Shown one piece after another: positions 1,809 through 62,489 of a DNA stretch of 64,000 bases. Numbering within the stretch: position 1 is the stretch's first letter; every line of letters starts with the position of its first letter. Source of the stretch: Hemiscyllium ocellatum (Eukaryota); the NCBI RefSeq assembly GCF_020745735.1, contig NC_083409.1, positions 23,952,048 through 24,016,047 of the forward strand, given 5' to 3'. The translations under genes and the position numbers were made by a program. The notes beneath the pieces are model-generated. The model saw only the letters and a list, made by a program, of their open reading frames with translations, did not search any database and was not told the origin of the DNA.

Positions 1809-2137
1809 CTACACACATTCTGATCTCCTGATGCTCTTGCTGAGGGGAGAGGGGAGGGTCACGTGGGTGAGGGCACAGGAGAAGCGAGCGTTGGACTCCC
1901 AGTCAGACCCAGAGAGGGTCAGCAGGCTGCTGACACTGTAGGTGCTGTCCGAAGCTCGCAGGTAGTTGCTGGTCTGAACCCCGTCTGAAATGACTGCACC
2001 ATCCTTCTTCCACTGCACCTCCAGCTCATCGGGATAGAAGTGATTGGCAAGGCACACCAGGGTGGCAGTGCCCTTGGCATTGACCTGCTCCAGGGAGGGG
2101 GGCAGCAGTGTCAGCTTGGGCTGTGAGTTGTCATGGC
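1809..2137 (-). CDS. IGKC: Ig kappa constant-region exon
   Basis: Acceptor TTTCTCTTGTCTTTCAG|GC; (S)HDNSQPKLTLLPPSLEQVNAKGTATLVCLANHFYPDELEVQWKKDG...YSVSSLLTLSGSDWESNARFSCALTHVTLPSPLSKSIRRSECV*; C1-set Cys/Trp/Cys and penultimate interchain Cys; closely resembles shark NS4 C region as recalled. Confidence 0.97.
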
Positions 2138-3279
2138 CTGAAAGACAAGAGAAACAATTTTAATTCCTACCACTGAAAGGGAATTCAAACTTCCCAATAT
2201 TCACTGGCCATTCAATCTTTTTGAACATTTGTAGTCAATACAGAATAAACCCCATAAAAGGACAGGGCCTTTTAAAATTGTTTCTTGGGATGTGAGTGTC
2301 ACTGGCAGGGCCAGCACTTATTACCCATCCCTAGTTGCCCCTGAGAAGGTGATGGTGAATCAGCAGAGAGAGAAGGGACAGTTTTGGATCATTGTTTATA
2401 GAATAAATGTGGGCAGCTGGAAAGGCTATCAATGGGGGAGCATTTCAGTGACAGTGATCAGAACACAGTGAGCCTGAGAGTAGGGATGGAAATAAAGAAG
2501 CATGGAGCAAGTGTAGAAGTTTTCATTTTACTAAACTGTGTGGTGCTTTGGTAAAAGTGGACTGGAAGCAGTGACATGATGGGAAATCAGTGTCAGGGCA
2601 GTGGGAGCCCTCGAAGGATGAGCCAGAGATCGTTCAGAATCTGCTCCCACAATGAGTAAGGGTGGGACTTCCAGGTCTAGACTGAATGAACAAGAGGATT
2701 GGGGGTCATGTACTGACATGGATTGGGAACTGGTTGGCAGACAGGACAGAAGGAGTGAATCTTTTTCTGAATGACAGGTAGTTACAACTTCGTGTACCAC
2801 ACGTGTCAGTCCTTGGTACTCAGTTATTCATAATATAATACAATCGAGTCATAGAGTCAGAGAGACCCAAAGGCCGATTGTGTCCATACTGGTCAAAAAA
2901 CCACAACTCAATAATTCTCATCCATTTTACCAGCATGGTGGAATTAGATGCAGTATGTGTTCAATCAAGAATTAGATATAGTTCTTTGGATTAAAGGGAT
3001 CAAAGAATGTGGGGAGAAAGCAGGAACAGGGGATTGTGTTGGATGATCAGCCATGATCATATTGAATGGTGGAACATGCTGGACCGGCCGAATGGCCTAC
3101 TGCTGCTCCTGTGTTTGATGTTTCTATCTGTTTCTCAGATAATGAAGGAATGTCTCTCATCAGTTTGAAGCTGGAAGTCAAATGTGTGTGGAGGTGGAAG
3201 ATGTGGCCACGGTGATTACTGAATACAGGTCAGTGAGGTGGTAAGAAGACACATGGGATAAACTGTTCTTCATTTTCCC

Positions 3280-3608: not shown

Positions 3609-3629
3609 TTATCTCATTTTTGGTTGACT

Positions 3630-5275: not shown

Positions 5276-5467
5276 TCAATCCAGCCCTTAACATTTCAGG
5301 CTCTTCCAAATACATTTACAGGCAGCTTTGTTTGACAAGCTACACTGTCGCAATGTCAGGAACGTGGCAGCCAGTTTCTACAGCAAGATCCAAGTAGAAG
5401 CACTGAGATCAAAGAGCAATAATGAAGTTGGATTAATGATAAATATTGCCCTGATTAGATTCCCTCT

Positions 5468-5770: not shown

Positions 5771-5789
5771 TGAAGGTAACCCAAAGCGA

Positions 5790-8700: not shown

Positions 8701-8995
8701 GCACAGCCTCAGAATGAAGGGCCGACCATTTGGAGTTGAGATGAGGAGGAATTTCTTCAGCCAGAGGGTGGCGAATCTGTGGAAGACGTTGTTACAGAGG
8801 GCAGTGGAGGCCAAGTCACTGAGTGTATTTAAGACAGAGATAGATAGGTTTGTGATTATTAAGGGGATCAAAGGTTCCTGTGGAGTAGGCAGGAGAATGG
8901 GGGTGAGAAGCATATTTGCCAAGATCAAATGGCAGAGCAGATTCAATGGGCGGAATGGCTGATTTCTGCTCCTATTTCTTAAAGTCTTCTGGAGA
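5790..8995 (+). mobile_element. Degenerate CR1-type LINE (ORF1 end plus most of ORF2) in the J-C intron
   Basis: Endonuclease and RT fragments in several frames (ORFs 6851, 7179, 7406, 8323, 8459, 8714) homologous to 28419-31223. Confidence 0.88.
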
Positions 8996-9119
8996 GTTTC
9001 CCCAAAACCCTGGAACACTGAATCCACTGGACTGTGAGCCCTGCTAGAGCTGTTTGTCATCAGAACTTTGCCAAGAGATAACCAAAGAGTGAAGAGAGTG
9101 TGCTTCCATGTGGGAATTT

Positions 9120-10020: not shown

Positions 10021-10294
10021 GGCAGGGCTGTGGGAGCCAGGGGGAATATCAGAGAGGGACATCAAGGTCCACAGAATTCTCAGTGCAGTCAATAAGTCAC
10101 CACCCAGTGGGAAGGATGTGGAAGAATACAAATGCCAGGAATTTACAGAAACCTGCAAATATGATAAAATGGTTATAAATGCGGGGAAGGGATCTTTAAT
10201 TTCTGTATATAAACTGGGATGGTAGCAATGTAACGGGCAGAGAGGGGCCAGAGCTGTGAGACTGTGTTCAGGTGAATTTTCAGGTGGCATCGTG

Positions 10295-12335
10295 GCCAGT
10301 GAAAAAGGCTGTCTAAGAGTACAATGGGATCTTGACCAACTGGGCCAGTGGGCTGAGGAATGGCAGATGGAGTTTAATTCAGATAAATGTGAGTGCTGTA
10401 TTTTGGTAAGACACAGGAGATGGGTGAGATCCTAAACAAATATTTCAGGTCAGTATTTATTGTGGAGAAGGACATGAATGCGACGGAATTTGGAAAAAAT
10501 AGTGATGCTTTCAACAAGTCCACAATACAAATGAGGAGATGCAAAAGGTCTTAAAACATATAAAGGTAGATAAATCCCTAGGACCTGATCAGGTATATCC
10601 CAGAACATTGTGGGAAACGAGGGAAGAGATTGCTGGGCCCCTTGCTGAGATATGTTTATGATCGACAGCTACAGGTAAGATGTTGGAGAACCAGAGAGGT
10701 TGGCTAATGTTGTACCATTATTTCAGAATGGCTGTAAGGGAAAAAACAGGGAACTATAGACCAGTGAGCATGATGTCAGTGCTGGGTAAGATGTTGGAGT
10801 GGATTCTGAGGGACAGGATTTCCATCCATTTGGATAATCAATGTGGTTTTGTGCGTGGCAAATTGTGTCTCCCTGATTTAATTGAGGAGGTGACAAAGAA
10901 GATTGATGAAAGCAGAACAGTAGACACTGTCTGTATGGACTTCAGTAAAGTATTTGATAAAGTTCCACATGATAGAATGGTTAGTAAGGTTAGACCACAT
11001 GGGATCCAGGGGGAGCCAGCCATTTGGGTAAAAAAAATTAGCTTGAAGATAGGAGAGAGGGTGTGGCGGTAAAGGGTTGATTTTCAGATCGGAGATCTGT
11101 GAATAGCTGTGTGCCGCAAGGAGTGGTGCTGGGTCCGCTGCTTTTGGTCATTTAAATAAATGATTTCACTGTGAATATAGGAGTTAACATAAGTTTGCAA
11201 ATGACATCAAAATTGGTGGGACGGTGGATAGTGAAGAACACTATCTCAGGGTACAGTGGGACCTTGATCAAATGGGGCAATGGGCAGAGGAGTGGAAAAT
11301 GGTGTTCAGTTTACATAAATGTGAGATGTTGCACCTTGGAAAGGCAAACCAGGGCAGGAGTTATACAGTTAATTGTAGGGCCTTGTGGAGTGTTGCTGGA
11401 CAAAGAGGGTGAGGGGTGAGGGGTGAGGGTGAGGGGTGAGGGGTGAGGGTGAGGGGTGAGGGGTGAGGGGTGAGGGGTGGGGGTGAGGGAAATGTACATT
11501 ATTTCTTAAAACTGGATCACAGGGCGATAAAGAAGGTTTTGGGAACGTTTGCCTTTATTGGTCACTGTATTGAGTATCGATGTTAGGACATCATGTTGCA
11601 GCTGTACAGGAGATTGGTGAGGCCACTTTGGGAATAATGTGAAGAATTCTGATCATTCTGTGATTGGAAGGATGTTGTTAAACTTTTAAAGGGTGCACAA
11701 AACGATTTACAAAGATTTTGCTAGGAATTGGAGGGTTTGAACGATAGGGAGAGGATGAATCGGAACATCGGAGGCTGAGAAATTTATAAAATCATGAGGG
11801 ACACAGATAATGTGACTAATTCAGGAAGCATGTGAATGTTTTGGATAGATGACAAATTATATTCCCAAAGGTCATTCCAGGGAATGAGGAACATCAGTTA
11901 TGAAGATCTACTGGAGAATTTGGGACCGTCTTCTTTGGAGAAGGCTGGAAGGAGATTTATTTGAGGAATTCAAAATCAGAAGGGGCCTGAACAGAATAAA
12001 TAGGGAGAAAATGTTCCCAATTGAGAAAGGATTGAGACCGAGAGAACACAGATTGAAAGTAATTGGGAAAAGTAACAAAAATGAGATGAGGAAAATCATT
12101 TTCAGCCAGTGAGTGGTTAAGGTGTGGAATGCGCTGCCTGAGAGTGTGGTGGAGGCAGCTTCAATTGAAACATTCTGAAGGGAATGAGACTGTTATTTGA
12201 AAAGGAACAATGTGCAGGGTGACAGGGAGAAGGCAGGAGAATGACACTCAGTGAATTGCTCATTCAGAGAGCCAGTACAGACAGGATGGGTGGAATGGCC
12301 TCCTTGTGCACTGTAACAATTCTGTGATTGTGTGA
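10295..12335 (+). mobile_element. Fragmented CR1 RT and 3' pieces in the J-C intron
   Basis: NYRPVS, CMDFSKVFDKVPH and 3'-end motifs (ORFs 10680, 11224, 11900). Confidence 0.85.
11405..11490 (+). repeat. G-rich tandem repeat (GAGGGT/GAGGGGT)n
   Basis: 13 units with a 6+7+7 higher-order pattern, inserted in a CR1 fragment. Confidence 0.95.
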
Positions 12336-12384
12336 TTGAGCAGAGTTAAAGCTGGGGGAGGTGGGAGCTCGGTGTCTCACTGTG

Positions 12385-12411
12385 CTGCTGCTGCTGCTGC
12401 TGCTGCTGCTG
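12385..12411 (+). repeat. (CTG)9 microsatellite ~375 bp 3' of J
   Basis: Nine perfect CTG units. Confidence 0.97.
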
Positions 12412-12785
12412 AGGTCAGTGAGATCAGAGACTGGGACAGGGAGCCAGAGCTCACATCAAACTCTGCCTGTGTCTGTCACACTGAGACTGGCAGGAGGCTA
12501 CTCACTGATTTCACTCCATGCTGCAGGAATGGGACCACAGGCTGCAAATGGACAGAGCTCCTCCACACGGTGAGTAAAACTTACTGACTTATATCTTGCA
12601 TTTTTTAAAGAGGGCATGAAAGTAAAGAAATACAGCTGGACACCCTGTTAGACACAGTGCTCCTCAATCAACCATTTCATTCACTGCAGCTCCCCACTAA
12701 CACCTTCAACAATTCAGCAACTGTATTTTAGAAAGTGTGTTTCAGTATTGACAGGGTTAATAACAGAGGATTGAGGTTTACTTAC

Positions 12786-12820
12786 TCAGTCTGAGCTTGG
12801 TTCCTGGACCGAACGTGAAC
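12786..12820 (-). CDS. IGKJ: Ig kappa J segment (FTFGPGTKLRL)
   Basis: F-G-X-G motif; donor CTGA|GTAAGT in phase 1, matching the C exon acceptor (A|GC = Ser). Confidence 0.96.
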
Positions 12821-12859
12821 CACAGTGAGAGCTCCCAGTGCAGGGGCTGTACAAAAACC
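12821..12859 (+). other. J recombination signal sequence, 23-bp spacer
   Basis: CACAGTG 12821-12827, 23-nt spacer, perfect ACAAAAACC 12851-12859; V-12/J-23 is the kappa-type arrangement. Confidence 0.97.
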
Positions 12860-13235: not shown

Positions 13236-13263
13236 GGTTTTTGGACGGCTCTGTATCACTGTG
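13236..13263 (-). other. V recombination signal sequence, 12-bp spacer
   Basis: Minus strand CACAGTG (13263-13257), 12-nt spacer ATACAGAGCCGT, nonamer CCAAAAACC (one mismatch to ACAAAAACC). Confidence 0.96.
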
Positions 13264-13560
13264 AAGGCCAGCTGTTACGTTGCTGACAGTAATAGTCAGC
13301 GACATCCTCATTCTGAACGTTGCTGATTGTCAGGGTGAAACTGGTCCCTGATCCACTGCCGGTGAATCGCTCGGAGACTCCTGTGAATCGATTTGTTGCA
13401 TCATAGATCAGGAGAGAGGGTTTCTGACCTTCTCGCTGCTGGTACCAAGCAAGGTAGCTGCTAATGCTTTGACTGGCCGTACAGGTGAGTGTTGCGGTCT
13501 GGTCCCGTCCCACTGACAGCACCGGGGGAGACTGAGTCATGATGATGTCCCCACTGATAC
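13264..13560 (-). CDS. IGKV: Ig kappa-type (NS4/type III-like) V segment, open frame, unrearranged
   Basis: Acceptor CCCCTCAG|GT; translates [100 protein letters not shown] with both Cys, WYQQ and DYYC; ends at an RSS heptamer. Confidence 0.97.
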
Positions 13561-13746
13561 CTGAGGGGTCAGAGAGAAACACAGTGAAGTCAGAACTGTC
13601 ACAGAAAGAGCCTGTCAAATGAGAGATTGTTGGAGACACTGAGCATTCCTCTGGTTTCAACATTTTCCCTTCAATCACAAGTCAGTGGAATTGGAGTGAA
13701 GTGGAGAGCAACTAAAGATTCAAGGTGGAAGGAGAGAGATTTGTAC

Positions 13747-13795
13747 CTGCGACACAGAATGCCAGGGGCCAGATCAGCTGGATGTGTGAAATCAT
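13747..13795 (-). CDS. IGKV: Ig kappa light chain leader exon (MISHIQLIWPLAFCVA/G)
   Basis: ATG at 13795-13793; 49-nt exon ending GCAG|GTAC (phase 1); hydrophobic peptide; splices in frame to the V exon across a 186-nt intron (13561-13746). Confidence 0.93.
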
Positions 13796-13909: not shown

Positions 13910-14944
13910 GGCATCAGGCAGAGAGAGCCACGTCAGTCCCTCACACTTCCTCTTCTGTCTCTCTCTGTCTCCCCATTCTCCCTCTCTCTCTCTGTCTGTC
14001 TATCCTAGAGAGACATTGATGTGAACTGTGCTGAATTAGACCATTTGTCCCATTGTGTCTGTGCTGGACAACAAAGACCTTGACAAACTAATCCCATTTT
14101 CCCGCTCTTGGTCCATAGGCCTGGAAGCTACAGCAACACAAATGTATATCTAAACACTGCTCCAATGTCACGAGAGTTTGTGACTCAAACAGCCTTTCAG
14201 GCAGTGAGTTCCAGACTCCCACCACCCTCTGGGTGAAAACACTTCTCCTCAACTCACCTCTCACTCTCTAAGTCGACTGGGCCTGAACTCACTTGAGTTC
14301 AGTAGGATAAGAGAGGATCAGATTGAAATGTATCAATTTCTAATAGGGCTGGGCAGGGAGGAGGTTTCCCCTGGTTGGGAATTCTGGAACCAGGGGACCC
14401 AGTCTTGGGGGATACAAAGTTGACCATTTAGGACTGAGATGAGGAAACATTTCTTCACTCAGAGGCTAGTCAACCTGTTGAACTCTGTACCTACGATCCT
14501 GACAGCTATGGAGGAGAGAGAATTGAATATGTTCAAGATTATTGTTCTGCCTTTTCACAGCATGAATGGAATGGGGAGAAAGCAGGAATATGGCTTTGAG
14601 ATGGAGGATCAGCCATGATCATACTGAATGACAGAGCAGAGTCAAAGGGCTGAGTGGGCTACTCCTGTTTCTGTGTTTCTGTGTTTCTGTTACCCTCAGT
14701 TTCTGACCCTAGTTTCTGACACCTTTATCCATGTAAAAAGTGCCTTCCTGTCGAATTTAAATGTGCCCCTCATAATCTTACAGTCCTCTGTCAGGTTTCC
14801 TCTCAACTTTCACTGCTCCAAGGAAAACAACCCCAGTCTTTCCAATCTTTCCTCATCACTCAGACCCTACAGCCCAGGCAGCATCCTGGGAAATCTCTGC
14901 ACCCTTCCGAGTACAACCACTTCCTTCCCACAATGTGGTGACCA

Positions 14945-15450
14945 GATCCTGTCTCTCTCTCTTTATCACTTTCTCTCTTTATCACTCCCATTCTGTCTCA
15001 CATCTGCCAACTCTTTCTCTCTATCTCTCTCTTTGGCACTCCTAATCTCTCCCATTCTCTCTCTCTCGCACTCTGTCCCATCATCACTCTCTGCAACTCA
15101 CTCACACTTTCTCACTCTGTCTCATAATCTCTATTTCTCCATCTCTCACTGTTTCCCTCACTTCCTCCCTTTCTTGTTTCTTATCTATTCTTTCTTCTTT
15201 CTCCATCCTTCCTCTCCACCTATCTGGTCTCTCTCTCTCTCTCTCTCTCTCCGTCCCCCTTAGTCACACTATCTCACACCCTATTTCTTTCCCCATTTCC
15301 CTCAACCTCACCATCTCTACTTCCATCTGCATCTCTCTCGCTCCCTGTACACATCTCACACTATCGCAGACACACCTCCCTCTCTCTCACACACACATGC
15401 TCTCCCTCCAACTCTCATTCTGTATCTCTTCCCTCTCTTTCCCACAGTAT
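14945..15450. repeat. CT-rich low-complexity tract (mirrored as GA-rich at ~45690-46375)
   Basis: Degenerate (CT)n; same junction to a CR1 fragment in both copies. Confidence 0.85.
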
Positions 15451-15459
15451 CCCAAGTGG

Positions 15460-15815
15460 TGACAGTTAATTGCAGGTCAAATCTCCCTCTGCTCTGGCCC
15501 ACTAATGGATGTTTGACTGGGACAGCACTACTATTATAGGACAAGCCAAACAGAGAACAGCCAGGGAATTCCTAGAGGCATGGCACTCATCCACAGATTC
15601 AATCAATAAGCACATCGACCTGGACCCAATATACCAGCCACTGCAGTGGACAGCTGGAACTGACAACCGGAAGCAGCAGAGACAAATCACTATAAATGCC
15701 GGAGGAAAGATCACAGAAGCGCTTCACAGGAGGCTCCCAAGCACTGAGGGTGTCACTTAGACAGGGGACGAAACGTCTGCAACACAAATTCCCAGGTCGG
15801 CGAACAGAACCACAA
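15460..15815 (+). mobile_element. Penelope-like element 3' fragment (second family)
   Basis: FDWDSTTIIGQAKQRTAREFLEAWHSSTDSINKHIDLDPIY, typical of the C-terminal part of the PLE GIY-YIG domain; absent from paralogous block B. Confidence 0.75.
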
Positions 15816-16244
15816 CAGTGGATATTAACTCTTAACCTCAGAAGCATGTCTTCTCCTGAAGTAAGGCCCCATTTCCCACATTGACCAGTCATTAGCCTGT
15901 CTCAAGATGATGGACAGATTCTTGTTAAATGAAGACAGTTTTGTGCTGTTGGCCTATTCTCACTGGGGACGGTTTGGACACAAACCTCATTCCATGAAGG
16001 CCCAGCAGAGAGAGGAGATCCTCAGGCCATCAGTGTGAGCCAGGGGGACAGGACAGGCTCTGACCCACTGACCCATCCTGTCCATTCACAACATGTTCCA
16101 ATCCCTTCCCCTCTCCTTCCCCTTCCACAGTCAGGCTCTGGGTCAAGGTGTTTTACTGGGATGAGGTCAGGGCCATCACACAATTACACCAGAAAGGAAC
16201 TGAGCCCCACACCCACCATGATATCCATGACCCACTGGGACTCT

Positions 16245-16595
16245 CCAATGGAGACCAGTATACATAGGCCTCCTTCCCACTGGATGTCCAGCAGACACCA
16301 GTATATATGGATCTCCATACCATTGGATCATCCAATACATATCAGTAAACATGGACCTCCATTACACTGGGCCCTTCAATAGACACCAGTAATCACAGGC
16401 CCCCAGCCCACTGGATGCTCCAATAGACTCCAGTAAACATGGGTCACCATCTCACAAGATACTTCAGTCGAGGCCAGTAAACTAGGGCCTTCTTTCCCCT
16501 GAACTTTACAATAGAGACCAGTAGCATGCATCCTGTTCCCACTGATCCTCCAATAGAGACCAGTAAACATGGGCTTTCATGCCACTGCACCCTTC
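16245..16595 (+). repeat. Degenerate ~44-bp minisatellite, 8 units (inverted copies ~43285-43430 and ~45020-45165)
   Basis: Consensus about CCAATAGAGACCAGTAAACATGGACCTCCTTCCCACTGGATGCT. Confidence 0.85.
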
Positions 16596-17184
16596 AGTAT
16601 CTGAGCTTCAAACCGCACATCCTCTCCATCACGTGGGCTTCTTTTCTATCTCCACAACATTGTCTCTCTGCACTACGTCAGCCCCTTGACCACAGAAACC
16701 CTTATTCCTGTTCATCCCACCTCCTAACTCCATAATCCCGATGTCCTCTCCTACCTTCCTTCCACCTGCTCCATAAAGCCCAACTGTCTGAAATGGAGTG
16801 GTCATTTCCCTGTCTCACACCAAGGAGGAGATGAACAGATATTTAATGAGTAATGGGTTAAAGGATGATGGAAAGTGGGCAGGAAAGTGGAGTTGAGTCT
16901 GAGATGGGATCAGCCATGATTGTATTAAATGGTGGAGTGGGCTCGAGGGGCTGAATTGCCTGCTCCTGCTCCTAGTTCTTATGTTCCTCCACCCTCTCCC
17001 GCATCCCTCTTACTGCAACTCTGTGAACCATCTTGGAATGTTTTGGATATTGAAGGTGCTGAATTAATGTGGGGACAGAATTGTACAGAGGCTGTGAAAG
17101 CTCCTGTAGTTGAATATCCTGCTGGCAGGCTTCAGCCTTCCACATACAGAATGGGAAAGTCGGGGAGGTCAGAATGTGATGTTG

Positions 17185-19345
17185 GGATCCTTGGCACTGT
17201 CCCCCAGCAATGTGGTTGACTCTCTATTGCCCTGTGAAATGGCCGAGCAAGGCTATCGGTTGTATCAATTGTGACGACCTCTCAACAAAGAAATGTAACC
17301 GGACGGACCACAGGCATCGATGCAGAGACAGTAAAGGTATTGACATACCTGCTGCATCCTCTTTACTGACATCTGGGGGCAAGTGCCAAATTCAGGAGAG
17401 CTGTCTCACAGACTGGTCAAGCAACAGCTTGGCACAGCCATACTCACAGAACCATACCTTACAGCAAATGTCCCAGACACCACCATCACTGTCCCTGCAT
17501 GTATCCTGTCCCACAGAAAGGCAAACACAGCAGAGCTGATGACACAGTGTCTACAGCCAGAAGGGAGTTACCCTGAGAGGCCTCAAAGTTGATTCCAGAC
17601 ACCATGAAGTCTCATGACCCCAGCCTAAACATGGGCAAGGAAACCTCCTGGTGATTACAAGATATTTTGCTCCCTCGGCTGATAAATCAGTCTCTCCTGG
17701 ATGTTGAACAGCATTTGGAGGAAGCACTGAGGGTGGTAACAGCACAGAATGTACTTTGGGTGGAGGGGTTTCAATGTCCACCACTGAGAGTGGCTTGGCA
17801 GCAGCATTACTGATCGAGTTGGTTGGTTCCTAATGGGTGTAGCTGAGGGACTGGCTCTGCAGCTGATGGTGAAGGAAACAAACAGATGGAAAAACGTACT
17901 TGACCCCATCCTCACCAATTTTGCGGCTGTGGATGCATCTGTCCTTGACAGTATTGGTAAGAGTGACCATAACACAGTCCTTGTAGAAACAAAGTTTAAC
18001 CTTCACATTGAGAATACCCTCCATTTTGGTGTGTGGTACTATCACCGTGCTAACTAGGACAGACTCCAAACAGATATTGCAACTCAAGGCAATGATCATG
18101 AATGGGGAGCATTGCCAATGAGTGCACAATCTCAACGCCTCATATACTGAAACAGTCCATGTTCGAATGCAGCAATATCTGCACAATATCCAATTTCATC
18201 TGAGAAGCAATATTTCCCATTGGTGCCTTGCAAATGCCAGCCAATGACCATCACCAATTAGAGACAATCTAGCCATCGTCCCTTGACAGTCAATGCTATT
18301 ACCATCACTGAATCCCCACTATCAACATTCTGAGGTATCATTGACCAGAAACTCAACTGGACTCACCACAGAAACACAGTGATTACATGAGCAGGTTAGA
18401 GGCGAGGAATACTGTATCGAGTAACTCACCTCCTGATTCCTCCAAAGCCTGTCAACCAAGTCAGGAATGTGATCGAATACTCCCCACTTGCCTGGATGGG
18501 TGCAGCTCCAACAATATTAATAGAATAATGGTGTTACAGAGTCATACAGCACAGAAACAAACCCTTAAGCCAAACTTCTATATTCTGACCAGGTTTTCTG
18601 AAGTGAACGAGTCTCATTTGCCTGCATTTGGCCCATATCCCTCGAATCCATTCCTGTCTATGTCTATCATATCCTATGTCATTCTTATCCACTCAGAAAG
18701 CTTGATACTATCCAGAGCCAAGCAGCCTCCTTGATTGGCATCACATCCACAAAGCATCCACTCCCACCACTGCTCCATAGCAGCAGCGTGTATTATTGAT
18801 AAGATGCTCAGCAGAAACTCACCAAAGATCCTCAGATAGCACCTTCCAAACCCATACGGGAAAATAGAAATTGCACAAAAAGCTCAGCAGATCTGGCAGC
18901 ATCTGTGGAGAGAAATCAGAGTTAACATTTCGGGTTGCGCACGAAGCATCATGTGACCCAGAAAGTCAACTCTGATGACTCTTCACAGATGCTGCCAGAC
19001 CTGCTGAGCTTTTCCAGCAATTTCTATTTTTGTCCCGGATTTACAGTATTTGCAGTCCTTATGGTTCCCTTCCAAACCCACGTCCACGTCCACTTAGAAC
19101 AAGAGCAGCAGATACATGGGAACACTGAGCTGCAAGTTCCCTTCGATAAAAGCTTAGCATTCTGACTTGGAAATGTATCACTATTCCTTCACTGTCGCTG
19201 GGTCAAAATGCTGGCATTCCCTCCCCAAGAGCATTGTGGGTCAACTTACAGCTTGTGGACGATAACAATTCCAGAAGGCAGCTTCCCACCACCTTCTCCA
19301 GGGTAACGAGGGACAGGGTAAAAAATGTTGGCCCAGCCGGTAAAG
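17185..19345 (+). mobile_element. Degenerate APE-RT non-LTR retrotransposon (CR1/L2 group, distinct family)
   Basis: GELSHRLVKQQ...ILTEPYL endonuclease start and RT/3' fragments; same family at ~41470-42000 and ~52380-54500. Confidence 0.7.
18855..19067. mobile_element. 213-bp fold-back element built from Penelope termini, 13-bp TSD
   Basis: Arms ~18861-18926 and ~18965-19031 are near-perfect inverted repeats; TSD CCTTCCAAACCCA at 18842-18854 and 19068-19080. Confidence 0.8.
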
Positions 19346-19699
19346 CCCCCTTCCCACGAATGAATACTTAAAACCAAATGAAGTGTTCCTCAGGAGGGGA
19401 GAGGGAATGTTCAGGATCCTGAACTCCATTTCCCAGCCCAGGCAGTTTGTCTCCCAATGAATGAATGAGATGCCAATTTGAAGCCCAGCTTCAGAGCAGT
19501 ATCACTCTGTGGACATGAGGTCTATAAGAGGGAATTGGAGATTGAGCTGAAAAGGAATGATTTGCTGAGTTATGGGGAGAGAGCAATGGGGCTAATTGAG
19601 TAATTCCAAGGCATGATGGGCTGAATGGACGCCTCTGTGCTGTCAGATTCCAGGGAGTGAGATGTCTCACAGTTTTCTCCTGTCTCAGTAACAAACGTC

Positions 19700-19884
19700 C
19701 AGCTGCTTTGAGCTCCTTCTTTCACTTCCTCTCTTGGTGAAGTTTCAACCTTGCAATCTGACAGTCTTTGCAGTTATTTTTTACACTGGGGCTTTCTGCT
19801 GTGGTTAGAATCTCTAATAATAAGTGTCCAATCAGTGACAATCACAGCAGCTAAGAGCAGTCAGGACTGAGGAGCCAGGCTCAC
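19700..19884 (-). promoter_or_regulatory. Conserved module M1, copy U (candidate lymphoid enhancer/promoter)
   Basis: GGAAGTGAAA 19729-19720, TGTGGTT, CCAATCAG 19828-19835, CAGCTG 19700-19705; 95-96% identical to the other two copies. Confidence 0.55.
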
Positions 19885-21276
19885 TGGGAAACACATTGGG
19901 AAGATCAAAGCTATCCTCTTCAGCACCTGGTACAAGCTCCATCCCTCTTCCTGAGCACTGTCTGCTGCTCAACCAGACTCTTTATAACTTTGGCCTTATC
20001 TTTGGGGCTGATTTGAGGCCCAACTCCTCCACATCACAAAGATCAGCCACTGAAAATCTCAGCCATTTTTTTGGGACTCCAAATGTGACTATTCCAATGT
20101 TATCCAGGCCCACGTCACAGCCACTGCCTTCTGTAAATATCAGCTCATCCCAAACTCTGCTATTGGTGTTCCAACTCACACCAAGTCCACCCCACACCCC
20201 CGTCCCTATCTTCCATCCCACCATGAACACCACAATCCACACTGACCGACATCAGCTCCTGGTCCAGCAACACCTTGATTTTCAAATTCTCATCCTTGTT
20301 CTTAAACCGCTCCCTGTCCTTCCATCCTCCCTATCTCTGTGACATCCTCCAAGCCACCTCAGTGTGGTCAGCAATCTTGGATATATGGCTCTCTGTTTCT
20401 TCATCCAAGTCATTGAGAAATATCGTGAAAAGATGAGGTCCCAGCACAGATCCCTGGCAACACCACTACTCACATCTGGCTCATTGGAACACACACAAAT
20501 TATCCTTCCTCTCTGTCCCTCACGGTGGGCATTTTAGAATGGCCAATTCACCTGACCTGCATATCTTTGCACCGTGGTAGGAAACCCACGCAGACGCAGG
20601 GAGAATGTATAAACTCTACACACATCCAAAGCTGGAATTGAACCTGGGCCCCTGGTGCTGTGAGGCAGCAGTGCTAACCACTGAGCCACTATATTGAACC
20701 TTCAATGTCTGAACCTTTGTAAATCCATGCTGATTCTCTCGGACCAGATCATATTTGTCCGTTATTCTGTCTCTAAAAACAGACTCAATCACTTCCTGAC
20801 AACAGACACTCAACGGAGATGTTCATTGTGAATGAGGTTACTAAACCACTAGCACTGACATGAGGGGCTGAAGAGCCTCCTTCTGAGCTGGAGCCTTCTC
20901 TGTCTCCTGGATGGAAATATTTTACAGATTAAAAATTAAAGACTAACATCATTTTTTTAAAAAACATTAAAAACTCCTCAAATAATTTCCACATACAGGG
21001 CCGGGCGATGTGTAGTAATTGTACGATGGGGAAGGTGGTGGAGCCCATTGTAGCTCAGAGTGACCACATCTACAGCAAGTGTTGGTTGCTCAAGGCACTC
21101 CAGCTCAGAGTTGATGAGCTGGAATCTGAGCTTCAAACACTGCGACACATCAGGGAGGGGGAGAGTTACCTGGACACTGTGTTTGGGGAGACAGTCACAC
21201 CTTGTAGGTTAAATACTTCAAATTATAGTCAGTGGTCAGGGACAGGAGGGTGTGACGATAAGTGAGCAGGTCGATG

Positions 21277-27012: not shown

Positions 27013-28418
27013 ACTGAATTGAGAAGGAACTTCTTCACCCAAGTCCTCGTAAATCTATGAAATTCCTTGCCCAAAGAAGTAGTTGATGTTAATTCAATAA
27101 ACATTTTTAAAGCTAAGAACGATTTTTTTCCAAGAATAAAGGAATTAAGAGATACGGTGAGAGCGCAGATAATTGGAGTTGAGTCCAAGAAATGATCAGC
27201 CATGATCTTATTGCATGGTGGAGCAGGCTCGAAGGGCCAGATGGCCTACCCCTGCTCCTGTTCCTAGTTCTTATGTTCCTTGGGAGTAGTGAGGAATGAA
27301 GGGACCTTGGTGTACAAGTCCATTGATCCCAGAAGATATCAGCACAGCTAGACAGGGTGGCGAAAAGGCATATGGGATGCTTGCCATCATTAGCCAAGTG
27401 TAGAATATAGGAGTAAGGAAGTCTTGTTGTTAATTTACAGAGCATTGATTAGGCCATATCTGGAACACTGTGTACAGTCTGGTCATGACACTGTCGGAAG
27501 GACATGACTGCACTGGAGAGGGTGGAGAGGAGACTCACCAGGATGTTCCCTGGAATGGACTGGCTTAGTTATGAGGAGAGACTGGATAGGCTGGGTTTGT
27601 TTTCTCTGGGGGAATTCTGATAAAGGTTTAAAAAATTATGAAAGACATAGACAAAGTAAATCGTGAGAATCTTTTCCCATGGCAGACACATCTGTGACCA
27701 GAGGGCATAAACAGAACGTGATGAAAAAGTGGTTTAGAGGGGTTTTGAGGACTTTTTTCCCCAGAGGGTGGTAGAAATATGGAATATGCTCCTTGAGAAT
27801 GTGCTGCTCCTCTCACAACATTTGAGAAACATCCAGATGAGCACAGAAAATGCCAGGGCATGGAAGGCTATGGACCAAGTGCAGGGGGGAGGGGTGGGGG
27901 GAGGATTAACACAGTTTGGTGATTACTGATCAGCATCGACATGTTAGGCAGGAGAACCTGTTTGTTTGCTGTATGACTCTATGACTGTGAAGTGAAGGAT
28001 TTGGAAGCATGAGAAGACAATTAAACAAGTGAGATGGGGAAAAATAATGGAGCTAGACCATGCAAAAATGAACTTGGGAAGCACAAGAGATTTCTGCATC
28101 CCTGTCAGAGGAATGTTCTCAGGATCATGAGGAGGTGAAAATGGCTATTCTATGCACACATGAGTCGGTCCCAGAAACATACAGACAGATGTTTCACAAC
28201 TTACAGATACAGCCTGGACAAACATCTACTGACTTTGAGACGGTGAGGTAGCAGTGCTAACCACTGAGACCCCGTGCCGCCATGGTTAACTTCAGAACAG
28301 AGTGCTGATGAGGAAGTGGAGACCCCCTCATGGACCCCTAGATGAAGAATGGTTGGTTAGACATTGGCTAGTGGTCCCACCCAGCTATCAGAGGGAACTA
28401 GTACAAGGAGCACATGAG

Positions 28419-40540: not shown

Positions 40541-41188
40541 AGCCAATTAGAGAAAAATATCTGTCTTTGGTGAGGAATTCATTTGGGTGTAGGCGGCCTT
40601 TGGATGTAGGAGACAGAGAAGAGGGATAATGTGTGTGCTCTCCAATAATGTGAATATTGGTGTCCCCAGGGATCTGCGCTGGGACCTCAGCATTTCATGA
40701 TATTTCTCAATGACATGGATGAAGGAATAGCGAGCCATTTATCCAAGATTGCAGACCACACTGAGCAACACAGCTTGGAGGAGGTTACAGAGATAGGGAG
40801 AGTGAAGGACAGGGATGGATTTGAGAACAAGCATGAGAATTTGATGACCGAAGTATTGCTGGTCCAGGAGCCAATGTAGATATGGCGTGCAGGGGATTGG
40901 GGGAACAGAAGTTGGTGCAAGTCTGGACATGGGCAGCAGACTTTGGTAAGAGTGAGTGCAGTGTCTGTGATGTGTGCAAGCACAACATTAGAATGCCCAT
41001 GTTTGGAGTCACAACAGGACGGCTGAGATTTTCAGTGGCTGATCTTTGTGATGTGGAAGATGTGGGACTCAGATCAGCAGGAAAGATGAGGCCCAGGTTG
41101 AAAGGAGTCTGGTTGAGCAGCAGACAGTGCTCAGGGAGAGGGATGGAGTTTATACCGGGAGCTGAAGAAGATGGCTGCGACCTTCACA

Positions 41189-41372
41189 GTGAGCCTGGCT
41201 CCTCAGTCCTGACTGCTCTTAGCTGCTGTGATTGTCACTGATTGGACACTTATTATTAGAGATTCTGACCACAGCAGAAAGCCCCAGTATAAAAAATAAC
41301 TGCAAAGGCTGTCAGATCGCAAGGTTGAAACTTCACCCAGAGAGGAAGTGAAAGAAGGAGCTCGGAGCAGCT
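41189..41372 (+). promoter_or_regulatory. Conserved module M1, copy B
   Basis: CTGATTGG 41238-41245, ACCACA, GGAAGTGAAA 41344-41353, CATCTG just downstream; 5 differences from copy C in 184 nt. Confidence 0.55.
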
Positions 41373-43429
41373 CATAAACACACACATCTGCACTCAGAGA
41401 TCAGAAACAGAATCCAGCAGCAGCTCTGTCTCCAAGCTGTGAAACCTGCACAGAATTGTTCCCTCATTCAGTTTTTAACTGGCAGGATAGACCAAGCAGG
41501 GGAGGCAACACAGTGGTGTGTACAGTCGGAAGGGAGTTGCCCTGAGAGTCCTCACCATTAACTATGGAACCCATGAAGCCTCATGACAGCAGGTCAAACA
41601 TGGGGAAGGAAACCTCCTGCTGATTACCACATAGCACCGCCCTCCCCTCCAACCTCAACTGAGCAGTCAGCCCTCCTCCATGTTGAACAACACTTGGAGG
41701 GAGCACTGAGGGTGGGAAGGATGCAGGATATACTCTGAGTAAGGGACTTCAAAGTCCACCATCAAAAGCTGCTCAGAAGCATCACTACTGAGCAAGCTGG
41801 TCACGCTCCACCTGATTCAGCTGCTAGACTGGACCTGGGGCGGGTGGTGAGGGAACCAACAAGACCGGAAAACGTACTCACTATCACGTTCACCAATCTG
41901 CCTGCTGCTGGTGTAGCTGGCCATGACAGTATCAGTAAGGGTGACCACTGCACAGTCCGTGTGGAGACAAAATCCTGTCTTCACATTGAGAATACCTTAC
42001 ATTTTGTTGGGCAAGAGATATGGAATGTCAGAAAGAACTTTGATTTTAGCAGCAATTGGCAAAGTCTTGGAAATTAGTGTCCATTCAGGTGAGGCAGGTG
42101 AAGACACTCAGTGATTGCAATGGCAGATTGGATGGGCTCTTGATGGAAATAAACCTGCAAGGCTCTGGGGGTCGAGTAGGGGAGGGGGTGGGACTGACTG
42201 GATTGCTCCATGACATGACAGCATTTACCTGACAGGCTGAATGTTCTCCCCCTGTGCTGGAAATAGGTCTCACTCAATGAGGGGTTCACAATTAGAGAGT
42301 TTGGATGCAGTAAATACAGGACAAATTGTTTCTCCAGGCAGGAGGGTCAGTAACCAGAGGACACACATTTCAGAAAGGGTCTGAAGAACAAGAGAGAAGA
42401 TAGGAACATTTTTATCCAGTGAGCTCATGATGACTGTCTGCAAGGTGAGTGGAAGTGGATTCAACAGCAACTTTCAAAACGGCATTTGGAGAAATAGCTG
42501 AAAAGGAAACAATTGCAGGGTTTTACATGAAGGGCTGGGTAAGTGGGACTCATTGGACTCATTTGACTAACAGTCACTATAGGCCAAGTGACCTCTGTCT
42601 GTGCTGTATAAGAGCTCACACACACTTAGTCTCACCTTTACACAAAAACTGGGAGAAAGAGACAACCCAGTTTACAGAAAAGTGTTTTCTCAAGCAAAAC
42701 GCTCTTGAACCAACTCAGGGAACGCGCCAGACTAGATTTACTGGACTACATCAGCAAATCAATGGCAAGGAACAGTGAACCAAAAGTAATGGCACTCAAC
42801 AGTATATTCAATAGCACAACAATTGAGAGGGGGAGGGATGAAGGGCAGGGGGTCAGAGAGCTCTAGGGGTCTGAAGGCTCTGCTGTCAATAGTGGGATGG
42901 AGGAAGCAGCAATGCGCAGGAGACCAGCGAGAGAAGATGGAAGGGGGAGGGAGGGAATGTGAGTCTGCAGCAGGACACGGAGTGAGGGAGGAGAAAGGCC
43001 ATGGAGGCAATTGGCTGTCAGTGAGGTCAGGGGTCATTCTGGAACAACACATGGAAAGACATGGAAGAGACCACGCCATATCAGACAAGCTGGCGTTTAT
43101 AGAATTTGGCTTCAGGAAGCCGGGAGAGGACATTGGAATCATATAGTTAGAAGGCGGGACAAACAGGAATTAGGGTTTCTGTGGTCAAGGGGCTGAGGTA
43201 GTGCAGAGACGGACAATGTTGTTAAGACTGAAATAAGAGACCTACGTGATGGAGAGGATGTGGGGTTTGCAGCTCACGTATTGGACAGTCCTGAGGGAAG
43301 GAGGCCCATGTTTACTGGTCTCTTCTGAAGCATCCAGTGGGAAGGAGGTCCATGTTTATTGGTGCCTATTGGAGGTTCCAGTGGGAAGGACGTCCATGTT
43401 TACTGGTCCTATGGGAAGATGGACCATGT

Positions 43430-61151: not shown

Positions 61152-61385
61152 ACACTAAATAAAAGATGAAAAAAGCTGTGGTTGTTGTAAATGAGGAACA
61201 AAAACTGAAATTGCTGGAAAGGCTCAGCAGGTCTGGCACCATCTGTGGAGAGAAAGCAGTTAGCATTTTGGGACAAGTGAACCTTCTTCAGAACTATTCT
61301 GAGAAAAGGTCACGCCACCCAAAATGTTAACGCTGATTTCTTTCCCCAGATGCAGCCAGACCTGCTGAGGTATTCTGTTTTTGCA
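61152..61385. mobile_element. Second fold-back Penelope-terminus element
   Basis: Inverted arms with CTGAAGA on the minus strand near 61283-61289; absent from paralogous blocks U and B. Confidence 0.7.
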
Positions 61386-61483
61386 AAGAGTTTAGTTGAG
61401 CAGCAGACAGTGCTCAGGGAGAGGGATGGAAGTTGTACTGGGAGCTGAAAAGGATGGTTGTGATCTTCCCAATGTGTTTCCCA

Positions 61484-61667
61484 GTGAGCCTGGCTCCTCA
61501 ATCCTGACTGCTCTTAGCTGCTGTGATTGTCACTGATTGGACACTTATTATTAGAGATTCTGACCACAGCAGAAAGCCCCAGTGTAAAAAATAACTGCAA
61601 AGACTGTCAGAGCACAAGGTTGAAACTTCACCCAGAGAGGAAGTGAAAGAAGGAGCTCGGAGCAGCT
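61484..61667 (+). promoter_or_regulatory. Conserved module M1, copy C
   Basis: CTGATTGG 61533-61540, GGAAGTGAAA 61639-61648, CAGCTG 61663-61668, CATCTG 61704-61709. Confidence 0.55.
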
Positions 61668-62489
61668 GGGTGTTTGTTACTGAGACGGGAGAAAAGTGTG
61701 AACCATCTGCACTCCCTGGAATCTGACAGCACATGAGAACATTAAAACCAGGAGCAGGAGCAGGCTATCTGGCCTCTTGGGTTGCTCTGCCATTCTGTAA
61801 GATCATGGCTCATCTTTTCATGGCCTCAGCTCCCCCTACCCACCTTTTCACCAAAACGCTTGATTCATTTACTGTTCAAAAAATTACCTGTCTTAGCTTT
61901 AAAACATTTACTGAGGAAACCTCAACCACTTCGCTGGGCAGGGAATTCCATAGATTCACCACCCTCTGGGTGAAGAAGTTCCTTCTCTATTCAGTCCTAA
62001 ATCTGCTCCCCCTAGCACACGAGGAGACCATTCAGCCCATCATGTCTGTGAGTGATCCAATTAATCCCACTGCCCCTCCCTCTCCCCATAACCCAGTAAA
62101 TCGTTCCTTTTCAGCTCAATCTCTAGTTGCCTCTTGTAGACCAGCAGAGCCTGTCCCTAACCTGGGCTCCAAATTGGCATCTCAGTCATTCACCGGGAGA
62201 CAAACTGCCTGGGCTGGGAAATGGAGCTCAGGACCCTGAACATTCTCTCTCCCCTCCTGAGGGACACTTGATGATGAGGGATAGTTCCAAGGAGCCCTAC
62301 AGTACACACTTCCCCATTCTGTGTGTAAAAGGCTGGAGCCTGCCAGCAGGATATTCAACTGCAGGAGCTATCATCTGTTTAATCAGTTCTGACCACCCCC
62401 ATTCTCCATAACCCTTCTAATCATTATTGATGGACAATCTCCTCCTTGTTGTGAGACAGGGAAGGGACTAGTCTGTTGCAGACAATTTG

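What the first reader, a model, noticed from the sequence alone, without database searches (positions are those of the whole stretch)
19700..19884. Triplicated 184-bp highly conserved module with exact PU.1/IRF composite: candidate shark Ig light-chain enhancer
Seen: three copies at equivalent positions of the duplicated units (19700-19884 minus, 41189-41372, 61484-61667; ~20-21.5 kb apart) differ at only 5-8 of 184 nt, while adjacent L2-derived sequence differs at 17 of 82 nt (B vs C). All keep GAGGAAGTGAAA, a RUNX site (TGTGGTT/TGTGGTC; the substitution stays within consensus) and an NF-Y box (CTGATTGG), with CAGCTG or CATCTG E-boxes next to the ETS-IRF site. Established: GGAAnnGAAA PU.1-IRF4 composites drive the mammalian Ig kappa 3' and lambda enhancers, beside an E2A site in the kappa 3' enhancer. 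Inference: a per-cluster upstream enhancer ~6 kb from V, retained even in unit B with no V-J-C, so possibly acting as shadow enhancers or as a non-coding RNA promoter.
Basis: partly seen in the sequence, partly recalled or inferred. Interest (0 to 1): 0.82.

Follow-up and report, generated by a model that had tools for sequence, protein, structure and literature searches.

The report
Conserved enhancer-like block upstream of shark kappa genes
A roughly 350-base non-coding block sits about 5-6 kb upstream of shark antibody kappa light-chain genes, stays almost identical between gene copies whose surroundings have drifted apart, and carries the same protein-binding-site pair, at the same spacing, as a mammalian kappa enhancer, so it is probably each mini-gene's own switch; its activity is untested.

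Summary
Three copies exist (A 19700-19884 minus, B 41189-41372, C 61484-61667) and differ at 5-8 of 184 nt, while collinear flanks differ by 18-22% (p 6e-7 to 1e-10). The conserved block is really about 350 bp (A 19636-19983, C 61385-61733). B has lost its 3' end.

It is not a structured RNA or a coding exon, and I found no transposon structure or scattered copies. In Chiloscyllium punctatum the block lies 6.4 kb and 4.7 kb upstream of two kappa V genes, on the same strand, as in unit A here (5.9 kb).

All five intact copies keep GGAAGTGAAA (GGAAATGAAG in one), exactly 14 nt, then CAGCTG. The human and mouse Ig-kappa 3' enhancer core has the same PU.1-IRF4 to E-box spacing.

Two points count against simple conservation. 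The near-orthologous pair, unit C and bamboo-shark L001, shows no slower change in the block (4.9-6.6% against 7.2%). Copy B keeps the core although it has no V-J-C. Gene conversion must therefore contribute.

Best reading: a per-cluster B-cell enhancer with a promoter-like core. No activity or transcript evidence was obtained. Earlier notes of this scan describe what appears to be the same block near other kappa clusters of this genome; I did not compare those sequences.

The parts
19636..19983 (-).
   Evidence: BLAST and MAFFT against copies B, C and bamboo-shark loci; nhmmer profile hit 19621-19999, E 7e-132
41098..41399 (+). Copy B of the block. The core 41189-41372 is intact. The 3' part has a deletion of about 35 bp that removes CAGCTG. 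The unit has no V-J-C.
61385..61733 (+). Copy C of the block (full length); the core is 61484-61667. Repeat insertions lie just 5' (61152-61381) and 3' (61734-62013), and both are shared with C. punctatum L001.
19700..19729 (-). Copy A: ETS-IRF composite GGAAGTGAAA (19720-19729), 14 nt, then E-box CAGCTG (19700-19705)
   Evidence: pattern search, 0 matches expected by chance in the window; coordinates
61639..61668 (+). Copy C: ETS-IRF composite GGAAGTGAAA (61639-61648), 14 nt, then E-box CAGCTG (61663-61668)
41344..41353 (+). Copy B: ETS-IRF composite GGAAGTGAAA. The partner CAGCTG is lost; CATCTG lies at 41385-41390.
19766..19806 (-). Copy A: most invariant core, TGACCACAGCAGAAAGCCCCAGTGTAAAAAATAACTGCAAAG. 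It holds the RUNX site (19800-19806) and the A/T-rich TATA- or MEF2-like stretch (19773-19786). The same core is at B 41267-41307 and C 61562-61602.
   Evidence: six-copy alignment; 40-nt window 95% identical even in the 25%-diverged copy L003a; coordinates
19828..19835 (+). CCAATCAG (NF-Y box; CTGATTGG on the block's strand). Also at B 41238-41245 and C 61533-61540. Not kept in either L003 copy.
13265..13795 (-). Kappa V gene of unit A: leader ATG at 13795, V exon to 13265, 12-spacer RSS heptamer at 13257-13263
   Evidence: V-set Pfam hit E 2e-16; motif and RSS scan; leader; 90% identical to an H. ocellatum 'immunoglobulin kappa light chain-like' protein
12786..12827 (-). J segment (FTFGPGTKLRL) with its 23-spacer RSS heptamer at 12821-12827; the nonamer lies 5' of the heptamer, outside these coordinates
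1812..2138 (-). Kappa C exon of unit A (the J-C intron is about 10.6 kb)
   Evidence: 83-91% identical to the C exons of bamboo-shark loci L003 and L005

Best explanation
The block is a cis-regulatory module that belongs to the 5' side of each shark kappa V-J-C cluster. Most likely it is a B-lineage enhancer. A Spi/PU.1-type ETS factor and IRF4/8 would bind the composite GGAAGTGAAA, and an E2A-type bHLH factor would bind CAGCTG exactly 14 nt away. That is the arrangement of the mammalian Ig-kappa 3' enhancer core. A RUNX site and an A/T-rich stretch lie 45-85 nt upstream.

The module would open and activate its own cluster, about 5-6 kb away, for transcription, rearrangement or hypermutation.

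Shown here:
- position and strand relative to V
- very high similarity among paralogs
- the motif content and its spacing

Inferred:
- which factors bind
- that the block acts as an enhancer

The near-identity among copies is kept at least partly by gene conversion between clusters, not only by selection on each copy.
For: - The core differs at 2.7-4.3% between copies A, B and C, while collinear flanks differ by 18-22%.
- Against the paralogous C. punctatum locus L001, the block is 93.5% identical. The flanks are 77% and 81%, and the V gene region is 88%.
- The block is found 6.4 kb upstream of V in L001 and 4.7 kb upstream in L003, on the same strand. L003 has a second, inverted copy that fits a head-to-head neighbour cluster. 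That gives three copies in 95 kb of independently fetched kappa DNA.
- An nhmmer profile finds no other copy in the window or the loci.
- EICE-N14-CAGCTG is present in all five intact copies, although the spacer letters differ. None is expected by chance.
- Human and mouse kappa 3' enhancers read GGAACTGAAA-N14-CATCTG, labelled PU.1/IRF4/E-box in the supplementary alignment of PMC3972084.
- In two DNA runs of different organism labels, the summed contig depth of the core bin is 3.5-10 times that of the neighbouring bins. Only 12-22 distinct contigs cover it, so many genomic copies collapse onto one sequence there.
- Exact 31-mers of the core are held by runs of at least five other organism labels.
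Against: - No functional, chromatin or transcript evidence. The one raw-read RNA run laid no reads. Contig runs showed no transcript starts, and the listed joints and loose ends all lie outside the block.
- In the near-orthologous pair, unit C and L001, the core changed at 4.9% and the block at 6.6%, against 7.2% overall (p 0.30 and 0.75). A constant-constraint model is rejected at P about 0.003. L001's V lacks Cys23, so that cluster may be dead.
- Against the 25%-diverged L003 copies, the block as a whole is no better kept than its flanks.
- Copy B keeps a 97%-identical core without any V-J-C.
- A bamboo-shark cluster with a frameshifted V (L005) shows no block, although an assembly gap could hide it.
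- The NF-Y box is lost in both L003 copies. There is no canonical MEF2 or NF-kB site as in lambda enhancers (MEF2 and NF-kB judged by eye from the alignment, no scan).
Confidence: 0.5

Rival explanations
1. It is a Pol II promoter, with the conserved 3' part as a non-coding first exon. It would drive sterile (germline) or lncRNA transcripts that run toward the V gene and open the cluster. The EICE and E-box would then act as promoter-proximal elements at about +30 and +54.
For: - In copies A, B, C and L001, a CCAAT box lies about 47 nt 5' of GT(A/G)TAAAAAATAA, and an Inr-like TCAGAT(C/T) lies 26-28 nt 3' of that.
- The orientation relative to V is fixed in all three testable clusters.
- Contigs of a run listed as probably RNA cover the block.
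Against: - The CCAAT box is destroyed in both L003 copies, and the Inr-like motif does not fit there.
- The expected start site is the most variable spot of the core, positions 129-131.
- The probable-RNA contigs also cover sequence 5' of the TATA-like stretch at similar depth. No transcript starts were reported, and no listed joint lies in the block.
- No splice donor is conserved at the 3' edge.
Confidence: 0.2
2. The block has no function of its own. It is a stretch of the kappa cluster repeat unit that is kept uniform by recurrent gene conversion (concerted evolution), and the motifs are incidental.
For: - In the near-orthologous pair, block divergence equals neutral divergence.
- All pairwise block distances among A, C and L001 (5.8-7.5%) are about the between-species flank distance (7.7%). 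That is a star-like pattern expected after one homogenisation.
- Copy B keeps the core without V-J-C.
- There is no excess conservation of the whole block against the L003 copies.
Against: - Conversion alone does not explain why the same 200-350 bp is homogenised in many copies of two genomes while both flanks are not.
- It does not explain why the EICE, the E-box and their 14-nt spacing survive 25% divergence.
- It does not explain why one 40-nt window stays 95% identical in L003a.
- It does not explain why the spacing equals that of a proven mammalian enhancer.
Confidence: 0.2
3. It is part of a transposable element (LTR, LINE tail or SINE) that merely happens to lie near kappa genes.
For: - Summed contig depth over the core is very high: 34,170 in X1 and 2,813 in X2, against lowest single contigs of about 5-18.
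- A LINE reverse-transcriptase fragment lies 480-640 bp upstream in all copies.
- CCAAT plus TATA resembles an LTR U3 region.
Against: - All six copies lie at collinear positions of a duplicated unit. None lies elsewhere in 159 kb searched.
- I saw no target-site duplication, terminal repeat, tRNA-like head, primer-binding site or simple-repeat tail (by eye; no repeat scan).
- Similarity falls off gradually rather than at sharp ends.
- The reverse-transcriptase homology stops about 480 bp before the block.
- The high depth fits a very large kappa cluster family. Earlier notes place kappa clusters over at least 17 Mb of this chromosome (unverified).
Confidence: 0.06
4. It is an exon on the opposite strand: a 55-codon open frame preceded by AG in all three window copies.
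For: - The open frame is at B 41206-41370 (minus), with an AG and a pyrimidine tract just 5' of it.
Against: - Copy A has a stop at codon 3.
- HMMER against 1.84 billion protein representatives gave only one spurious repeat hit.
- In the other copies, conservation runs straight across the supposed acceptor.
Confidence: 0.02

Closest known systems
Mammalian Ig-kappa 3' enhancer core (PU.1 / IRF4 (NF-EM5, Pip) / E2A sites)
   Same: - It has an ETS-IRF composite GGAAnnGAAA followed by an E-box exactly 14 nt downstream. Human and mouse read GGAACTGAAA-N14-CATCTG. The shark block reads GGAAGTGAAA-N14-CAGCTG.
- It lies in a kappa-type light-chain locus.
   Different: - The mammalian enhancer is a single copy about 9-12 kb downstream of C-kappa (from memory). 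The shark block lies about 5-6 kb upstream of V, once per cluster.
- There is no alignable similarity outside the motifs.
- The E-box type differs (CAGCTG against CATCTG).
- Binding and activity are proven in mammals and untested here.
Vertebrate Ig-lambda enhancers (human, mouse E-lambda 2-4 and 3-1, chicken)
   Same: - They have a PU.1-IRF4 composite site with E-boxes. In mammals a further E-box lies about 50 bp downstream of the PU.1 site, and these motifs are essential for enhancer and hypermutation-targeting activity (PMC3972084).
- The chicken enhancer also has CCAATCAG between its MEF2 and PU.1 sites.
   Different: - Lambda enhancers have conserved NF-kB and MEF2 sites. By eye, the shark block has no NF-kB site and only an off-spacing A/T-rich stretch, with a 9/10 MEF2 match in one diverged copy only.
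- They lie downstream of C.
Germline (sterile) transcript promoters of antigen-receptor loci, such as the mouse J-kappa germline promoters
   Same: - They are non-coding promoters upstream of the recombining segments, and their transcription accompanies locus opening.
- The block has CCAAT, a TATA-like stretch and an Inr-like motif correctly spaced in four of six copies.
   Different: - No transcript evidence was obtained here.
- The promoter motifs are not kept in the diverged copies.
- The block lies upstream of V, not between V and J.

Membership tests
Ig light-chain EICE-type enhancer (kappa 3' / lambda enhancers) | ETS-IRF composite element GGAAnnGAAA | tested here: met
   GGAAGTGAAA is present in A, B, C, L001 and L003a; L003b has GGAAATGAAG. 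The 64-kb window holds only six GGAAnnGAAA matches in all, three of them in the modules.
Ig light-chain EICE-type enhancer (kappa 3' / lambda enhancers) | E2A-type E-box beside the composite site | tested here: met
   CAGCTG lies exactly 14 nt 3' of the composite site in five of six copies, with 0 matches expected by chance. The spacing is the same as in the human and mouse kappa 3' enhancer. It is lost in copy B.
Ig light-chain EICE-type enhancer (kappa 3' / lambda enhancers) | Lies within an Ig light-chain locus and is linked to the genes it serves | tested here: met
   The block lies 5.9 kb (window unit A), 6.4 kb (L001) and 4.7 kb (L003) upstream of kappa V, on the same strand. No block was found in L005, which has a V pseudogene and an assembly gap.
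Ig light-chain EICE-type enhancer (kappa 3' / lambda enhancers) | Sequence conserved beyond the neutral level | tested here: inconclusive
   Between paralogs the core differs by 2.7-4.3% and the flanks by 18-22%. In the near-orthologous pair the figures are 4.9-6.6% against 7.2%, which is not significant. Against the L003 copies only the motifs and a 40-nt core stand out.
Ig light-chain EICE-type enhancer (kappa 3' / lambda enhancers) | NF-kB and MEF2 sites (lambda enhancers) | tested here: not met
   I saw no NF-kB consensus (by eye, no scan). TAAAAAATAA is one base too long for YTAWWWWTAR. Only L003a gives a 9/10 MEF2 match.
Ig light-chain EICE-type enhancer (kappa 3' / lambda enhancers) | B-cell-specific enhancer activity; binding of PU.1/Spi-B, IRF4/8 and E2A | not testable with these tools
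   This needs reporter assays, EMSA or ChIP, and ATAC or H3K27ac data from shark lymphoid tissue.
Pol II core promoter | CCAAT box, TATA box and initiator at canonical distances | tested here: inconclusive
   All three are present and correctly spaced in A, B, C and L001. The CCAAT box and the Inr are lost in L003a and L003b.
Pol II core promoter | Transcripts that start there | tested here: inconclusive
   Read laying reported no places where molecules begin. The only raw-read RNA run laid 0 reads. Probable-RNA contigs cover both sides of the TATA-like stretch.
Transposable element | Terminal structures (TSD, LTR or TIR, poly-A or simple-repeat tail, tRNA head) and copies at unrelated sites | tested here: not met
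   I saw no such structures (by eye, no repeat scan). All six copies are at collinear positions of the kappa unit, and none lies elsewhere in 159 kb. The genome-wide distribution could not be mapped.
Structured non-coding RNA | Rfam match or a fold more stable than shuffled sequence | tested here: not met
   Rfam gave no hit at gathering score (whole window) or at E<=10 (copy C region only). Folding z-scores are -0.54 and +0.60.

The most novel reading that the evidence does not exclude
The EICE-14 nt-E-box core is the true evolutionary counterpart of the mammalian Ig-kappa 3' enhancer core. It would have been inherited from the kappa locus of the last common ancestor of jawed vertebrates. In sharks it would be kept as one autonomous enhancer per V-J-C cluster, giving the physical basis for the cluster-by-cluster, probabilistic activation proposed to explain Ig exclusion in sharks.
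Probability: 0.2. Interest if true: 0.8.

Novelty: new variant of a known kind. Interest (0 to 1): 0.55.

Why it matters
I found no paper in the searchable library that describes an enhancer for a shark immunoglobulin cluster. How sharks switch on only a few of their many separate Ig mini-loci per B cell is an open question. The Hsu laboratory proposed that formation of a promoter-enhancer complex is the limiting step (PMC2435157).

A short, per-cluster element with the PU.1-IRF4-E2A architecture of the mammalian kappa 3' enhancer would be a concrete candidate to test with reporter, ATAC and mutation-targeting assays. If confirmed, this enhancer logic would predate the split of cartilaginous and bony vertebrates.

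The mix of very high paralog identity and near-neutral ortholog divergence also makes the block a useful case of concerted evolution of a regulatory element within a large gene family.

Tried and rejected
- **Antisense coding exon.** A 55-codon frame with a 5' AG was considered. It was rejected because copy A has a stop, there is no homolog among 1.84 billion protein representatives, and conservation crosses the supposed acceptor.
- **Antisense ORFs of about 147 aa in the upstream flank.** They lie in different frames in the three copies and are not conserved.
- **LINE 3' tail.** Reverse-transcriptase homology covers only about 60 aa and stops about 480 bp before the block. The block has stops in all forward frames.
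- **LTR.** I saw no TG...CA ends, no target-site duplication and no tRNA-like primer-binding site after the block (by eye, no scan). Similarity decays gradually.
- **Structured RNA.** Rfam and folding were negative.
- **MHC class II-type S-X-Y promoter (CTGATTGG Y box).** By eye, and from remembered consensus sequences, there is no X box at the required distance.
- **Transcript evidence.** The single read-laying run gave none. The raw-read single-cell run laid nothing, and the contig runs are dominated by repeats.
- **Copy number from contig depth.** This can only be bounded very roughly, because single-copy depth is unknown.
- **Upstream DNA from other genomes.** Fetching from the chromosome-level assemblies of Hemiscyllium, Cetorhinus and Heterodontus and from a Scyliorhinus torazame scaffold failed because the files were too large. 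Conservation beyond the family Hemiscylliidae rests only on shared 31-mers in runs with coded organism names.
- **Earlier-findings look-up by sequence.** It returned nothing.

Full report
**The observation**

In the 184-nt core, A-B differ at 7 positions, A-C at 8 and B-C at 5. All three keep GGAAGTGAAA, ACCACA (RUNX) and ATTGG within CTGATTGG.

A self-BLAST of the window and directed pairwise BLAST show that the copies sit in collinear duplicated units:
- A (minus strand) 20517 to 14772 matches B (plus strand) 40612 to 46555.
- B 38582-41372 matches C 59465-61667.
- A 20517 to 16741 matches C 60633 to 62530.

Substitution divergence in the collinear flanks is 17.8-21.6%, against 2.7-4.3% in the core. 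Fisher p is 6e-7 to 1e-10. Background identity is uneven: a LINE reverse-transcriptase fragment at 20368-20467 also reaches 84-94%. The core windows, at 92-100%, are still the highest.

It starts about 100 nt further 5' and, in A and C, runs 65 nt further 3' (A 19636-19983, C 61385-61733).

**The surroundings**

Unit A carries an intact kappa-type cluster on the minus strand:
- leader ATG at 13795
- V exon 13265-13549 with a 12-spacer RSS
- J 12786-12820 with a 23-spacer RSS
- C exon 1812-2138

The V is 90% identical to a protein that NCBI names 'immunoglobulin kappa light chain-like [Hemiscyllium ocellatum]'. This agrees with earlier notes of this scan that the genome is the epaulette shark.

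The core ends 5.9 kb upstream of the V start, on the same strand. Unit B has no V or C remnant, and its block has lost about 35 bp, including CAGCTG. Unit C's genes would lie beyond the window end.

**What the block is not**

- Rfam finds nothing at gathering score across the window, nor at E<=10 around copy C.
- Neither strand folds better than shuffled sequence.
- The upstream flank holds only about 60 aa of LINE reverse transcriptase ([10 protein letters not shown]...ADHT). That homology stops about 480 bp before the block.
- Antisense ORFs in the flank are in different frames in the three copies.
- A 55-codon antisense frame across the core, preceded by AG in all three copies, looked like a possible exon. 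Copy A has a stop in it. A full HMMER search of 1.84 billion protein representatives found only a spurious repeat protein. In the other copies, conservation continues across the supposed splice acceptor.
- By eye, I saw no terminal repeats, target-site duplications, primer-binding site or simple-repeat tail that would mark the block as a mobile element. I ran no repeat scan.

**Copy number and other organisms**

Sampled 31-mers of the core are held by DNA runs of three organism labels (shares 0.38-0.58). Smaller shares are held by runs listed as probably RNA from three more labels.

I laid contigs on 14101-20100. The summed word depth of the core bin and its neighbouring bins was:

| Run | Core bin | Neighbouring bins |
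|---|---|---|
| X1 | 34,170 | 3,393 and 5,723 |
| X2 | 2,813 | 726 and 809 |

Only 12-22 distinct contigs cover the core. Copy A's private letters (19708, 19806) are replaced by the B/C letters in essentially all of that depth. Many genomic copies therefore collapse onto one core sequence while their flanks do not.

Single-copy depth is unknown, because the lowest single contigs are about 5-18. I can only say the family has at least many dozens of members, and probably hundreds.

At first this looked like a transposon signal. Earlier notes of this scan report kappa clusters, each with a block of about 250-350 bp carrying EICE, E-box and RUNX about 5 kb upstream of V, at a dozen places. They span more than 17 Mb of this chromosome and other pieces. 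These notes are unverified, and I did not compare their sequences with mine. A very large kappa family would account for the depth.

A contig of the probable-RNA run X15 spans 19756-20066. It has 1 mismatch in the 129 core positions and 26 in the 182 flank positions, the same pattern in another organism label.

No transcript starts were reported, and the listed joints and loose ends all lie outside the block. The only raw-read RNA run laid no reads. Transcription is therefore untested.

**Independent test of the link to kappa genes**

I searched the protein database with the V region and fetched the DNA around the hits in the Chiloscyllium punctatum draft assembly.

| Locus | V gene | Block | Result |
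|---|---|---|---|
| L001 | V exon at 10247-10531 | 3264-3615, same strand, 93% identical | 6.4 kb before the gene start; whole locus collinear with unit A |
| L003 | complete V-J-C of a more distant subfamily | 4949-5284, same strand, 77% identical | 4.7 kb before the gene start; a second, inverted copy at 996-1350 fits a head-to-head neighbour |
| L002, L004 | present | none found | too little upstream DNA to test |
| L005 | frameshifted pseudogene | none in 38.8 kb | an 884-nt assembly gap lies upstream |

A profile of the six copies finds no further copy anywhere in the 159 kb held.

The block therefore belongs to the 5' side of kappa clusters in two genera and two V subfamilies. In the A-L001 comparison it is the best-kept segment of the whole unit: 93.5%, against 88% for the V gene region and 85% for the J region.

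**Architecture**

In the six-copy alignment, the most invariant stretch is TAGAGATTCTGACCACAGCAGAAAGCCCCAGTGTAAAAAATAACTGCAAA. It holds the RUNX site and an A/T-rich stretch. One 40-nt window is 95% identical even in the 25%-diverged L003a.

The composite GGAAGTGAAA is intact in five copies and reads GGAAATGAAG in the sixth. CAGCTG follows after exactly 14 nt in all five copies that still have that region, although the spacer letters differ. No match to this pattern is expected by chance in the window.

The supplementary alignment of Buerstedde et al. 2014 (PMC3972084) labels PU.1, IRF4 and E-box in the human and mouse Ig-kappa 3' enhancers as GGAACTGAAA, 14 nt, CATCTG. The spacing is the same. 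That paper also shows that PU.1-IRF4, E-box, MEF2 and NF-kB motifs are conserved and needed in chicken, mouse and human lambda enhancers.

The shark block differs from those enhancers in several respects:
- By eye, it has no NF-kB site and no canonical MEF2 site.
- The NF-Y box is lost in both L003 copies.
- The RUNX site is lost in L003b.

In A, B, C and L001 the order is CCAAT, 47 nt, a TATA-like stretch, 26-28 nt, then Inr-like TCAGAT(C/T). This is a textbook core-promoter layout. The expected start site, however, is the most variable spot of the core, and the layout is not kept in the L003 copies.

**Selection or conversion**

Unit C and L001 align over 4.3 kb without a break, at 7.2% substitutions. 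They share the repeat insertions that flank the block, so they are orthologous or nearly so.

Within that alignment the core differs at 9 of 184 positions (4.9%) and the block at 23 of 348 (6.6%). Neither is lower than the rest (p 0.30 and 0.75). If the A-C ratio of core to flank divergence (0.22) applied, 2.9 core differences would be expected. Nine were seen (P about 0.003).

All pairwise block distances among A, C and L001 (5.8-7.5%) are close to the between-species flank distance (7.7%). Uniform purifying selection on each copy cannot explain the data. The block must have been homogenised among paralogs, and copy B shows that a core can stay 97% identical without genes to serve.

Two caveats apply. 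L001's V has Tyr in place of the canonical Cys23, so that cluster may be dead and its block unconstrained. And with 9 differences seen against 13 expected, the test has little power.

Against purely neutral homogenisation stand three points: the same short segment is the homogenised one in many copies of two organisms, the motifs and their spacing survive 25% divergence, and the spacing equals that of a proven enhancer.

**Verdict**

The block is a cluster-linked, non-coding, probably regulatory element of shark kappa genes. I read it as an enhancer of the kappa 3' type (confidence 0.5). The rivals are:
- a sterile-transcript promoter (0.2)
- a functionless homogenised stretch (0.2)
- a transposable element (0.06)
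- an antisense exon (0.02)

The held literature describes no shark Ig enhancer. This is a new variant of a known kind, and function has not been shown.

The same scan has noted what appears to be this element near other kappa clusters of this genome, and one earlier follow-up reached a similar reading. This report adds:
- the 14-nt spacing match to the kappa 3' enhancer
- the true extent of the block
- the direct bamboo-shark loci
- the evidence that concerted evolution, not just constraint, underlies the paralog identity

Noticed in passing
window 15851-16138 (minus strand unit A); B 45192-45627; L001 8362-8651; L002 900-1227; L005 12208-12656: A second island about 2.1-2.3 kb upstream of the V start is 80-89% identical among paralogs and between genera, above the 70-77% of its surroundings. 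Its contig depth in X1 (13,195) is about 40% of the core's. It could be another regulatory piece of the kappa unit, or a repeat.
   Followed up: partly
window 46555-47900 and 31455-32320: Unit B stops being collinear with unit A about 1 kb before the place where V should start (B 46555 / A 14772). The next 1.2 kb (46641-47862) is an inverted copy, 88-90% identical, of 31455-32320. This suggests an inversion or deletion that removed B's V-J-C.
   Followed up: no
window 28418-31144 (+): A LINE has adjacent open frames for endonuclease (363 aa, Exo_endo_phos E 9e-19) and reverse transcriptase (543 aa, RVT_1 E 2e-32). It is possibly a young element, and it lies between units A and B.
   Followed up: no
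L001 10247-10531; L005 14541-14762: The bamboo-shark V next to the well-kept block in L001 has Tyr where the canonical Cys23 should be. The V in L005, a locus without a detectable block, is frameshifted and lacks CDR1. Both are probably pseudogenes.
   Followed up: partly
window 62384-62570 against L001: The slowest-changing stretch of the 4.3-kb alignment between unit C and its bamboo-shark counterpart is this one (3.3-3.8% against 7.2% overall), not the block. It lies about 0.8 kb 3' of the block.
   Followed up: no
window 1713-1722 (+): A further GGAAnnGAAA match lies about 90 nt beyond the stop codon of the C exon, on the opposite strand. It may be chance. Earlier notes of the scan mention candidate 3' elements in other kappa clusters.
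   Followed up: no
window 2139-12785: The J-C intron of unit A is about 10.6 kb and full of repeats. The bamboo-shark cluster L003 has about 3.6 kb.
   Followed up: no
proteins P0173 and P0179: Two Ig kappa-like fragments, 66-69% identical to the bamboo-shark light chain, are filed in NCBI under Aeromonas veronii and Salmonella enterica. They sit on contigs of 507 and 990 bp and are almost certainly host or sample contamination in bacterial assemblies.
   Followed up: no
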